From Octopus bimaculoides (taxonomy: Eukaryota), in the NCBI RefSeq assembly GCF_001194135.2, contig NC_068993.1, forward strand, positions 4,402,293 to 4,466,292: DNA of 64,000 nt. The letters run 5' to 3'. Positions 25,668 through 27,085 of this stretch are shown here, piece by piece. Under the pieces are notes generated by a model. That model was not told the DNA's origin. It searched no databases and saw only the letters and a program-made list of their open reading frames with translations. The position numbers were made by a program, and so were the translations under genes. The first letter of the stretch is position 1. Each line of letters starts with the position of its first letter.

Positions 25668-25916
25668 TAGATAAATAAATATGCAGTCATTGATATTTTT
25701 TCTCTCCAAAGGTATTTTGAACCCATTATTATTCATAGCATTATCTGCTTTGCATTTCATAGTTCCCAAAAAGAATGGTGTGTGTGTGTGTGTGTATTAT
25801 CCGAAGTGTATAGTATCATATATCCATTATGGCCGGCCATACCAATTGGTTTCACACCAGGGATTCAACGGAGTGTTAGGTAACAATCCAATTATGTAAC
25901 CCTGCGCTCATCAGAA

Positions 25917-25978
25917 GTAGCCGATATGGAATGAAATATGGCGACTGCAGGTGCTATATTTCATTCCGTATTGGCTAC
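25917..25978 (+). ncRNA. Candidate pre-miRNA-like hairpin
   Basis: 23-bp stem gtagccgatatggaatgaaatat / atatttcattccgtattggctac with only two G-U pairs, a 16-nt loop, and a basal stem (catcagaa / ttctg..atg). Not recognised as a known family. Confidence 0.4.
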
Positions 25979-27085
25979 CCAGATTCTGTGATGTATATAT
26001 ATGCTCACCATGGAGGAAATGACAGTCTGTCACTGGATTACTCATTTTTACCAGCCAAGTGGACTGGAGCAACATGAAACGAAGTGTTTTATTCAAAAAC
26101 AAAACAACACACCAACCTCTCCAGGAATTGAAATCACAGTCCTACAATCACAAGTGTGACACTCTAGCAACTAAATCACATACCTCCACTGTTTGTATGT
26201 ATACATACATCTATTTGCATCTTTAATTTACTTTTCTTTAGATTTCCCAACTTTATAAATCACGATAAATTGCACAAAATTATGTACACTTCTTATATTT
26301 CCTTCAAATTCCCTTCGATTTATTTCATTTATAATTTCATTATTTATACATCTATTTTATTTCTTATTAAGTCTAAGATCTTTCTTTAATGCACGCCTCA
26401 ATCATTCCACTTTTTAAACTTATAATCACATAACTGTCTCAGTGCTACATGTTAACAAGATTTTTCTTTTTTCCTTAATTACACCAGCTAACGTATTTAT
26501 TCTTTAATTAATGCTAGGAAATATCCAGATACTCTAAATTTCACTCTTAATGTTTTCTCTAATTTCATTTATTCCTATAATATCATGATACTATATTTAT
26601 AAAGTCAACGACCTTTCCTCTATGTTTCTATCAATTCGGTTTTAATACTTCACTTGGCATTATATATTTCAGTTTTTTTCCTTTTTCAGGTTATTTGTTC
26701 GTCCCCTTTTCTTCACCTCTTATTTTTTATCTCTTTTTGAATTCATTTACTTTGTCTTTTTTTTTACTTGTTTTTCTCCATCTTAAAATTTTCCTCTCTT
26801 TCTTTCTTTCCTTACTTCTCTGCCTCTTTGTCTTTTACTCATTTCAGTTATTTGATCACAGCCCAGCTGGGGCACTGTCTTAACAGGTTTATTCTTAAAG
26901 AGCATTGTCTTAAAGGGTTTATTCAAATACATCAACACAGGGATTTATTCTTAACTCTGCTGCTGCTTCTATTTTCCTCAGGCATTGAACAACTGCAGCT
27001 ACGCAGATAACTCTGCTCCAGTTCCCAAGAAATGGAGGACACATACACCCCCTCCCCCCACACACACACATGTACATATATTAAG

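What the first reader, a model, noticed from the sequence alone, without database searches (positions are those of the whole stretch)
25909..25995. Isolated pre-miRNA-like hairpin in otherwise unique sequence
Seen: a 23-bp stem (25917-25939 with 25956-25978) whose only imperfections are two G-U pairs on the + strand (A-C mismatches on the - strand), a 16-nt loop, and an extra basal helix (catcagaa with ttctg/atg) beyond a 5-nt bulge. No second copy is visible in the window. Known: this geometry (about 22-bp duplex plus basal stem) suits Drosha/Dicer, and coleoids have many lineage-specific miRNAs. Inference: a possibly unannotated + strand miRNA; I do not recognise either arm as a conserved family.
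Basis: partly seen in the sequence, partly recalled or inferred. Interest (0 to 1): 0.7.

Follow-up and report, generated by a model that had tools for sequence, protein, structure and literature searches.

The report
Isolated 85-bp DNA palindrome, unproven miRNA
The hairpin is real and has the right size for a microRNA precursor, but it looks like an ordinary small DNA palindrome in repeat-rich octopod non-coding DNA, and nothing available here shows that it is expressed, conserved or processed.

Summary
Positions 25917-25939 pair with 25956-25978 (23 bp, two G.U pairs). An outer helix CATCAGAA/TTCTGTGATG lies beyond a 5-nt bulge. The + strand RNA folds at -45.5 kcal/mol (z -9.4), and there is no second copy in the window.

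The "loop" is itself palindromic. The core is a 62-bp zero-spacer palindrome centred on CTG|CAG (25947|25948). Three of its five arm differences are CpG->TpG changes. That points to a one-step DNA-level inverted duplication that is now decaying, not to a shaped miRNA precursor.

The window is octopod DNA: it shares SINE families with Argonauta hians. It is AT-rich, full of SINEs, transposon fragments and microsatellites, and has no recognisable exon.

Stem length (33-35 bp) and loop fit Drosha/Dicer, but no CNNC or apical UGU motif sits in register. Rfam gives nothing. Two plausible 3p seed sites are listed as non-seed k-mers in the Octopus vulgaris miRNA study.

Comparable non-simple palindromes occur about 4 per 84 kb of octopod DNA sampled, against about 164 octopus miRNA genes.

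No cephalopod genome or small-RNA data could be reached, so genome copy number, conservation and expression remain untested. Best reading: a neutral young palindrome, at most raw material for a miRNA. I put a genuine miRNA at about 7%.

The parts
25909..25916 (.). Outer (basal) helix, 5' strand: CATCAGAA
   Evidence: It pairs with 25984-25993 in the RNA and DNA folds. The + versus - alignment shows the palindrome extending here, with indels.
25917..25947 (.). Left arm of the 62-bp zero-spacer core palindrome. It would hold the 5p arm, about 25917/25920 to 25938/25941, if the hairpin were processed.
   Evidence: the repeat finder I4: arms 25917-25947 and 25948-25978, 31 nt, 84% complementary, 0 nt between them. 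Pair-by-pair table. Candidate cleavage registers.
25948..25978 (.). Right arm of the core palindrome. It would hold the 3p arm, about 25956-25980, if the hairpin were processed.
   Evidence: It carries two of the three CpG->TpG changes (T25952, T25972); the third is T25927 in the left arm.
25979..25983 (.). 5-nt insertion CCAGA, present only on the 3' side; it forms an asymmetric bulge in the fold
25984..25993 (.). Outer (basal) helix, 3' strand: TTCTGTGATG, with a 1-2 nt bulge
   Evidence: Palindromy stops here: the flanks CCCTGCGCT and TATATATATGCT are neither complementary nor direct repeats.

Best explanation
This is an 85-bp DNA palindrome sitting in repeat-rich, apparently non-coding octopod DNA. 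The core (25917-25978) is a palindrome with no spacer, centred on CTG|CAG. An outer 8-10 bp continuation is interrupted by small indels.

It most probably arose in a single DNA-level event: an inverted duplication by replication template switching or fold-back synthesis. It has since been decaying neutrally. It is not a demonstrated gene.

If the + strand happens to be transcribed, the RNA would fold into a 33-35 bp hairpin of the size Drosha and Dicer accept. That makes it raw material for a future miRNA rather than an established one.

Shown: the palindrome, its zero spacer, the pattern of arm differences, its uniqueness in the window, and the octopod repeat context.
Inferred: the mode of origin, the neutrality, and the lack of processing.
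For: 1. Palindromy continues into the supposed loop: C25942-G25953, G25943.T25952, C25945-G25950, T25946-A25949 and G25947-C25948. The arms abut with 0 nt between them. A selected miRNA loop has no reason to be palindromic; a fold-back or template-switch product does.

2. Three of the five arm differences are C->T at CpG (25927, 25952, 25972), the commonest neutral substitution.

3. It is unique in 64 kb plus 20 kb of Argonauta DNA, even to a covariance model. No target-site duplication flanks it, and it does not resemble the neighbouring mariner or SINE sequences.

4. Palindromes of the same class are common. With stem >=20 bp, <=2 non-Watson-Crick pairs, loop <=40 and non-simple sequence, there are 2 in the window and 2 in 20 kb of Argonauta hians. 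Octopus has about 164 miRNA genes (PMC9699675).

5. In primates, template switching made about 6,054 miRNA-sized hairpins, of which 0.9% are annotated miRNAs (PMC10710096).

6. No exon, host gene or known miRNA lies in the window. Lack of a promoter is the limiting factor named in PMC10710096.
Against: All four transition-type differences leave G.U pairs on the + strand rather than A.C. That would be expected if the + strand RNA structure were under selection. It is only p = 1/16 one-sided, and strand-biased CpG deamination explains it equally well.

The total stem length, loop size and thermodynamics are close to the ideal pri-miRNA.

Genome-wide copy number was not measured, so a low- or medium-copy transposon family is not excluded. 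Absence of expression was not shown either.
Confidence: 0.55

Rival explanations
1. It is one copy of a small palindromic non-autonomous DNA transposon (MITE-like, as Made1 is in primates). The two arms would be its terminal inverted repeats.
For: Nearly the whole element is an inverted repeat, as in Made1 (PMC1784062). The region is rich in DNA-transposon debris: mariner-type transposase fragments at 24453-24647 and 25026-25221 (Pfam Transposase_1, E 7.9e-9). The random 20-kb Argonauta sample also holds a longer palindromic element, at L007:7745-7875.
Against: No second copy was found in 64 kb plus 20 kb, though this only excludes very high copy numbers. No TA, TTA/TAA or 8-bp direct repeat sits at the palindrome ends; there is only an offset 4-nt CAGA. 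The arms do not resemble the ends of the nearby mariner fragments.
Confidence: 0.25
2. It is a genuine, young, lineage-restricted + strand miRNA gene. Drosha would cut about 8-11 bp above the basal junction and Dicer about 22 nt further on. That would give a 5p of about 25917/25920-25938/25941 and a 3p of about 25956-25980.
For: There are 33-35 bp from the basal junction to the apical loop. The loop is 10-16 nt, MFEI is 1.23, and the hairpin is stable in context. A UG falls at -14/-13 for the register that starts at 25917. All transition differences are G.U on the + strand. Octopus annotation admittedly misses miRNAs younger than about 50 My (PMC9699675). Template-switch palindromes do give rise to miRNAs (PMC10710096).
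Against: There is no CNNC at +16-18 in any register and no apical UGU. A 5-nt asymmetric bulge sits at the expected Drosha site. The loop is palindromic. There is no Rfam hit. The 3p seed sites TGAAATAA and ATGAAATA are listed as 'Non-seed kmer' in the O. vulgaris data. The arm sequences are absent from that paper's supplements and from the searchable literature. No host transcript is visible. The base rate is below 1%.
Confidence: 0.07
3. It is part of the 3' region or tail of the decayed tRNA-derived SINE that lies next to it on the - strand (head near 26190, body down to about 26036).
For: The hairpin starts about 40 nt beyond the last recognisable SINE base. Only a (TA)n run and about 30 nt separate them.
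Against: The other copy of this SINE in the window (54150-54460) has a different 3' region. Local alignment to the hairpin region scores below the shuffle mean (14 against 15.8 +/- 2.2). No other SINE copy carries the palindrome.
Confidence: 0.03
4. It has some other function as a structured element, for example an ADAR-edited double-stranded RNA within a long transcript, or a protein-binding or cruciform DNA site.
For: A 26-bp near-perfect duplex would be an ADAR substrate if transcribed, and coleoids edit RNA heavily (PMC9699675). The DNA fold is also strongly favoured.
Against: There is no exon, no conserved neighbour and no evidence of transcription. Nothing distinguishes it from the other palindromes found at about 4 per 84 kb.
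Confidence: 0.04

Closest known systems
Template-switch-mutation (TSM) hairpins, the raw material of de novo miRNAs (Monttinen, Frilander & Loytynoja 2023, PMC10710096; also PMC8794818)
   Same: A perfect or near-perfect inverted repeat of miRNA-precursor size, apparently made in one step in otherwise unique sequence. Most such hairpins (about 99%) never become annotated miRNAs.
   Different: The defining test is an ancestral sequence that lacks one arm, inferred from outgroup genomes. It could not be run here. That work was mainly on primates, with further cases reported from other lineages. The zero spacer here could equally come from fold-back synthesis at a break.
Made1 MITE / hsa-mir-548 family (Piriyapongsa & Jordan 2007, PMC1784062)
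   Same: A short element, about 80 bp, that is almost entirely a palindrome and folds into a miRNA-like hairpin.
   Different: Made1 has thousands of copies, TA target-site duplications and mariner-derived termini. Here no second copy, no TSD and no similarity to the adjacent mariner fragments were found.
Novel coleoid/Octopus miRNA families (Zolotarov et al. 2022, PMC9699675; MirGeneDB)
   Same: Octopod genome, an isolated hairpin not clustered with other miRNAs, and stem-loop geometry of the right size.
   Different: Those families are backed by small-RNA reads and by presence in two Octopus species that split about 50 My ago. This hairpin has neither kind of evidence. Its sequence is not in the paper's held supplements, and two plausible 3p seeds are listed there as non-seed k-mers.

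Membership tests
Canonical animal miRNA gene (MirGeneDB-type criteria) | Hairpin in which two ~20-26-nt arms share at least 16 complementary positions | tested here: met
   23-26 contiguous pairs, two to three of them G.U.
Canonical animal miRNA gene (MirGeneDB-type criteria) | About 35-bp stem between a single-stranded basal junction and an apical loop of 10 nt or more | tested here: met
   33-35 nt on the 5' side, from 25909 to the loop. The loop is 10-16 nt. A 5-nt asymmetric bulge sits at the expected Drosha site.
Canonical animal miRNA gene (MirGeneDB-type criteria) | 5p and 3p small-RNA reads with homogeneous 5' ends and 2-nt 3' overhangs | not testable with these tools
   No small-RNA data are reachable. 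This is the decisive test.
Canonical animal miRNA gene (MirGeneDB-type criteria) | Presence of the hairpin in a second species, with arms more conserved than the loop | not testable with these tools
   No cephalopod genome could be searched by DNA. Look-ups of ORFs over or near the hairpin, and protein searches, returned nothing or only chance bacterial hits. The DNA collections gave only bacterial chance palindromes.
Canonical animal miRNA gene (MirGeneDB-type criteria) | Auxiliary processing motifs: basal UG (-14), apical UGU/GUG, CNNC at +16-18 | tested here: not met
   No CNNC within +16-18 in any of six registers; the nearest is at +25-27. There is no UGU on the 5' side of the loop. UG falls at -14/-13 only for the register starting at 25917. 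These motifs enhance processing but do not define a miRNA.
Canonical animal miRNA gene (MirGeneDB-type criteria) | Match to a described miRNA family | tested here: not met
   Rfam 15: no hit at gathering score. The best sub-threshold hit is 19 bits against a cut-off of 80. Arm 12-mers are absent from the literature and from the PMC9699675 supplements. MirGeneDB itself was not searchable.
MITE / palindromic DNA transposon | Many dispersed copies in the genome | tested here: inconclusive
   No other copy in the 64-kb window or in 20 kb of Argonauta DNA. That sample only excludes families of roughly 10^5 copies or more.
MITE / palindromic DNA transposon | Target-site duplication flanking the terminal inverted repeats | tested here: not met
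   The flanks ...CCCTGCGCT | palindrome | TATATATATGCT... share no TA, TWA or 8-bp repeat. For the inner boundary there is only an offset CAGA(A/T).
MITE / palindromic DNA transposon | Termini related to an autonomous element | tested here: not met
   No similarity to the adjacent mariner-type fragments or to any other sequence in the window.
Template-switch / fold-back inverted duplication | Inverted repeat with little or no spacer in otherwise unique sequence | tested here: met
   The arms abut at 25947|25948. The flanks from 25800 to 26000 are unique in the window.
Template-switch / fold-back inverted duplication | Ancestral or outgroup sequence lacking one arm, with the change explained by one switch event | not testable with these tools
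   It needs orthologous loci from other octopods.

The most novel reading that the evidence does not exclude
A species- or genus-restricted octopod miRNA caught very early after its birth from a template-switch or fold-back palindrome. The loop is still palindromic, and the arms differ only by CpG decay that preserves G.U pairing on the transcribed strand. It would be missing from current annotation because that annotation required presence in two Octopus species separated by about 50 My.
Probability: 0.06. Interest if true: 0.4.

Novelty: new member of a known kind. Interest (0 to 1): 0.12.

Why it matters
As it stands it matters little. It is one of what are probably tens of thousands of short palindromes in an octopod genome.

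Its value is as an example of the raw material from which lineage-specific miRNAs can arise. Coleoids are notable for a large miRNA expansion whose source is unknown (PMC9699675). If small-RNA data showed precise processing, it would be a dated, mechanistically readable case of de novo miRNA birth in a cephalopod. Even then, a single young, unconserved miRNA would be a modest finding.

Tried and rejected
1. Known RNA family. Rfam at gathering score over the whole window, and at E<=10 over 25700-26250, gave only sub-threshold noise.

2. Second copy in the window. A search with 3 mismatches, a 12-mer search, blastn with word size 7, and a covariance model without filters found only the hairpin itself.

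3. Relatives in public DNA collections. The pattern GGAATGAAATAT-N8-24-ATATTTCATTCC was scanned in the metagenome, prokaryote-genome and viral contigs. It gave five bacterial or metagenomic chance palindromes and none viral. These collections hold no cephalopod DNA.

4. Reaching orthologous or paralogous loci through ORFs.
- Exact look-ups of three window ORFs (one over the hairpin, one beside it, one elsewhere) found nothing.
- Word-indexed searches with the hairpin ORF, and with a 1,179-aa concatenate of 18 unique ORFs within about 5 kb, found nothing.
- A full HMMER scan with the 76-aa hairpin+SINE ORF gave three hits at E~1e-5. They are repeated CxxCH-type bacterial proteins and are chance matches.
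- Not even SINE-derived ORFs were found, so these negatives say nothing about copy number.

5. Part of the neighbouring SINE: rejected.

6. Derived from the nearby mariner ends: rejected.

7. Large palindrome spanning the inverted repeats 25212-25303 and 26507-26597, with the hairpin at its centre. There is no inverted similarity in between and the centres are 42 nt apart, so this is not supported.

8. Argonauta hairpin L007:7781-7857, the best heterologous covariance-model hit (19.9 bits). It shares GCTCATCAG at its base with this hairpin. It proved to be an unrelated, longer palindromic element, and the shared 9-mer lies in an insertion.

9. Literature look-up of the arm sequences and seeds gave no match.

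10. Assembly artefact: rejected, because the arms differ by five substitutions and two indels.

Full report
OBSERVATION. The sequence at 25909-25995 is as described.

Positions 25917-25939 pair with 25956-25978. The only non-Watson-Crick pairs are G25923.U25972 and U25927.G25968. Beyond a 5-nt 3' bulge (CCAGA, 25979-25983), CATCAGAA (25909-25916) pairs with TTCTGTGATG (25984-25993).

As + strand RNA the 87 nt fold at -45.5 kcal/mol. Dinucleotide shuffles give -18.6 +/- 2.85 (z -9.4, 0 of 200 as good). The - strand gives -32.6 (z -7.1) because the two wobble pairs become A.C mismatches. As DNA the fold is -24.1 (z -8.9).

The stem survives intact (25 of 25 pairs) when 200-500 nt of context are folded. 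Pair probabilities are at least 0.99 and MFEI is 1.23.

In a sliding 90-nt scan of both strands it is one of the two most stable hairpins not made of simple repeats. So it is real and far beyond chance.

No second copy exists in the window by mismatch search, by blastn with word size 7, or by a covariance model run with filters off (self 107 bits, next best 24 bits, a microsatellite).

ANATOMY. The palindrome continues through it, with G25940.T25955, G25941-C25954, C25942-G25953, G25943.T25952, C25945-G25950, T25946-A25949 and G25947-C25948.

The repeat finder therefore reports two 31-nt arms, 25917-25947 and 25948-25978, 84% complementary, with 0 nt between them. The centre is CTG|CAG.

The five arm differences are:
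- three C->T changes at CpG on the + strand (T25927, T25952, T25972; the partner arm still has the CpG);
- one non-CpG G/T difference (25940/25955);
- one A/G mismatch (25944/25951).

Outside the core the palindrome goes on for 8-10 nt with a 5-nt and a 1-2-nt indel. It stops at 25909/25993. The flanks CCCTGCGCT and TATATATATGCT are neither complementary nor direct repeats.

All four transition-type differences leave G.U on the + strand. Under neutrality that is 1 in 16. It is a hint at most, and strand-biased CpG deamination explains it equally well.

CONTEXT. The window is 26-36% G+C and interrupted by N runs next to microsatellites.

Recognisable content near the hairpin and elsewhere:
- a reverse-transcriptase fragment at 2-364 (-);
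- mariner-type transposase fragments in inverted orientation at 24453-24647 and 25026-25221 (Transposase_1, E 7.9e-9);
- a Tc1-like HTH fragment at 53501-53935;
- many SINE copies.

No host-gene exon was recognised among all stop-to-stop ORFs of 50 aa or more.

Twenty SINE matches of 72-90% identity to a 20-kb locus of Argonauta hians (NCBI GCA_054771915.1) show that the window is octopod. Two ENA metagenome loci that carry the same reverse-transcriptase family share no SINE with the window; one shares only the RT stretch.

Immediately around the hairpin are (GT)n at 25778-25797 and (TA)n at 25993-26003. A decayed tRNA-derived SINE lies on the - strand from about 26190 down to about 26036.

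The hairpin is not part of that SINE. The other copy of the SINE (54150-54460) has a different 3' region, and local alignment to the hairpin region scores below the shuffle mean.

A 92-nt inverted-repeat pair, 25212-25303 and 26507-26597 at about 75% identity, brackets the region. Nothing between the two copies is inverted apart from the hairpin itself.

RELATIVES ELSEWHERE. None could be reached.
- The DNA collections hold no cephalopod sequence. A core-arm pattern found only bacterial operator-like palindromes.
- ORFs spanning or flanking the hairpin are not on record.
- Two word-indexed protein searches found nothing. The second used a concatenate of 18 unique neighbouring ORFs to fish for an orthologous locus.
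- A full HMMER scan gave three borderline hits to repeated CxxCH bacterial proteins, which are chance matches.

Even the SINE part of the query found nothing. These negatives therefore show that octopod non-coding DNA is not represented in those libraries. They do not show that the hairpin is single-copy. Genome copy number, conservation and expression remain open.

IS IT A miRNA?

Met:
- arm complementarity;
- 33-35 nt from basal junction to loop, close to the ~35-bp ideal quoted in PMC10710096;
- a loop of 10-16 nt;
- stability.

Not met:
- no CNNC at +16-18 in any of six cleavage registers (nearest +25-27);
- no UGU on the 5' side of the loop;
- UG at -14/-13 in only one register;
- a 5-nt asymmetric bulge exactly where Drosha should cut;
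- no Rfam family.

Zolotarov et al. (PMC9699675) report 164 miRNA genes in O. vulgaris. Novel ones had to be present in two Octopus species about 50 My apart, and younger miRNAs are admittedly missed.

That paper's held supplements contain neither arm sequence. They list the 8-mer sites TGAAATAA and ATGAAATA as 'Non-seed kmer'. Those are the sites a 3p starting at 25956 or 25957 would recognise. The file is truncated, the 5p sites are absent from it, and MirGeneDB itself could not be queried.

Full-text searches for arm 12-mers found only unrelated primers.

BASE RATE. I scanned for palindromes with a stem of at least 20 bp, at most 2 non-Watson-Crick pairs, a loop of at most 40 nt and non-simple sequence. 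The window holds two (this one and 16419-16468), and the random 20-kb Argonauta locus holds two more.

About 4 per 84 kb extrapolates to several tens of thousands per octopod genome, against 164 miRNA genes. This is my extrapolation from a small sample.

In primates, only 0.9% of 6,054 miRNA-sized hairpins made by template switching are annotated miRNAs, and the limiting factor is a promoter (PMC10710096).

EXPLANATION. The best reading (0.55) is a one-step DNA-level inverted duplication, by template switch or fold-back synthesis, that produced a zero-spacer palindrome. That palindrome is now decaying mainly at CpG sites. It is neutral, and at most it is proto-miRNA raw material.

Rivals:
- A palindromic MITE copy (0.25). 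This is not excluded because copy number is unknown, but there is no TSD, no second copy and no link to the nearby mariner debris.
- A genuine young miRNA (0.07).
- Part of the SINE (0.03).
- Another structured-element function (0.04).

The origin mechanism, the neutrality and the lack of processing are inferences. The structure, the zero spacer, the mutation pattern, the uniqueness in the window and the octopod context are shown.

NOVELTY. This is an ordinary new instance of a known kind of feature. It would become modestly interesting only if small-RNA data showed precise processing. It would then be a readable case of de novo miRNA birth in a lineage famous for miRNA expansion.

Noticed in passing
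window 48157-48200: A perfect 18-bp palindrome (TCAAGTCCTCAGTCCTCC aaga GGAGGACTGAGGACTTGA). Its 90-nt scan window folds at -47.2 kcal/mol together with an adjacent second hairpin. It lies inside a LINE-like ORF fragment (48016-48300, -). It is the other top non-simple hairpin of the window.
   Followed up: partly
window 16419-16468: Another isolated non-simple palindrome: a 21-bp stem with 2 mismatches and an 8-nt loop (AGCTAATAAGTTATCTGATCA / TGATCAGATAACTTATAAACT).
   Followed up: no
window 24453-24647 and 25026-25221: Two mariner-type transposase C-terminal fragments in head-to-head inverted orientation, 71% identical over 202 nt (Pfam Transposase_1, E 7.9e-9). Both are decayed and internally deleted.
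   Followed up: partly
window 25212-25303 and 26507-26597: A 92-nt inverted-repeat pair (about 75% identity) brackets a 1.4-kb segment that contains the hairpin, two microsatellites and a SINE. No other copies are in the window and no clear target-site duplication was seen. Its nature is unknown; it may be the ends of a non-autonomous DNA element.
   Followed up: partly
window 37416-37475 (+): An Rfam tRNA hit just above the gathering score (32.3 against 29 bits). ARAGORN does not call it. It is probably the tRNA-derived head of a SINE.
   Followed up: no
window 2-364 (-): A reverse-transcriptase (RVT_1) fragment cut by the window edge. Its best database hit, at 76% identity, is a 586-nt record labelled Escherichia coli, which looks like a mislabelled animal contaminant. 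Other hits lie on eukaryote-like contigs in ENA metagenome assemblies, and one is in Argonauta hians.
   Followed up: partly
L007 7745-7875 (Argonauta hians GCA_054771915.1, BAAFZT010000001.1): A palindromic element of about 115-130 nt. It has a 29-bp inner stem and a further outer inverted repeat (CTGAGATATCAG). A 38-nt insertion flanked by ATCAG repeats interrupts one arm. It is a structural analogue of the window hairpin but unrelated in sequence.
   Followed up: partly
window 1075-1164, 21379-21474, 27094-27190, 27541-27611, 29943-30042, 53996-54091, 62445-62545: Copies of one short SINE-like family, 73-82% identical to each other. They match Argonauta hians (L007:1517-1632 and 19997-20089) at 77-90% identity, so the family is shared across octopods.
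   Followed up: partly
window 53501-53935 (+): A 144-aa ORF with weak helix-turn-helix / Tc3-type transposase N-terminal matches (Pfam E 1e-3 to 1e-2). It is probably a decayed Tc1/mariner element.
   Followed up: no
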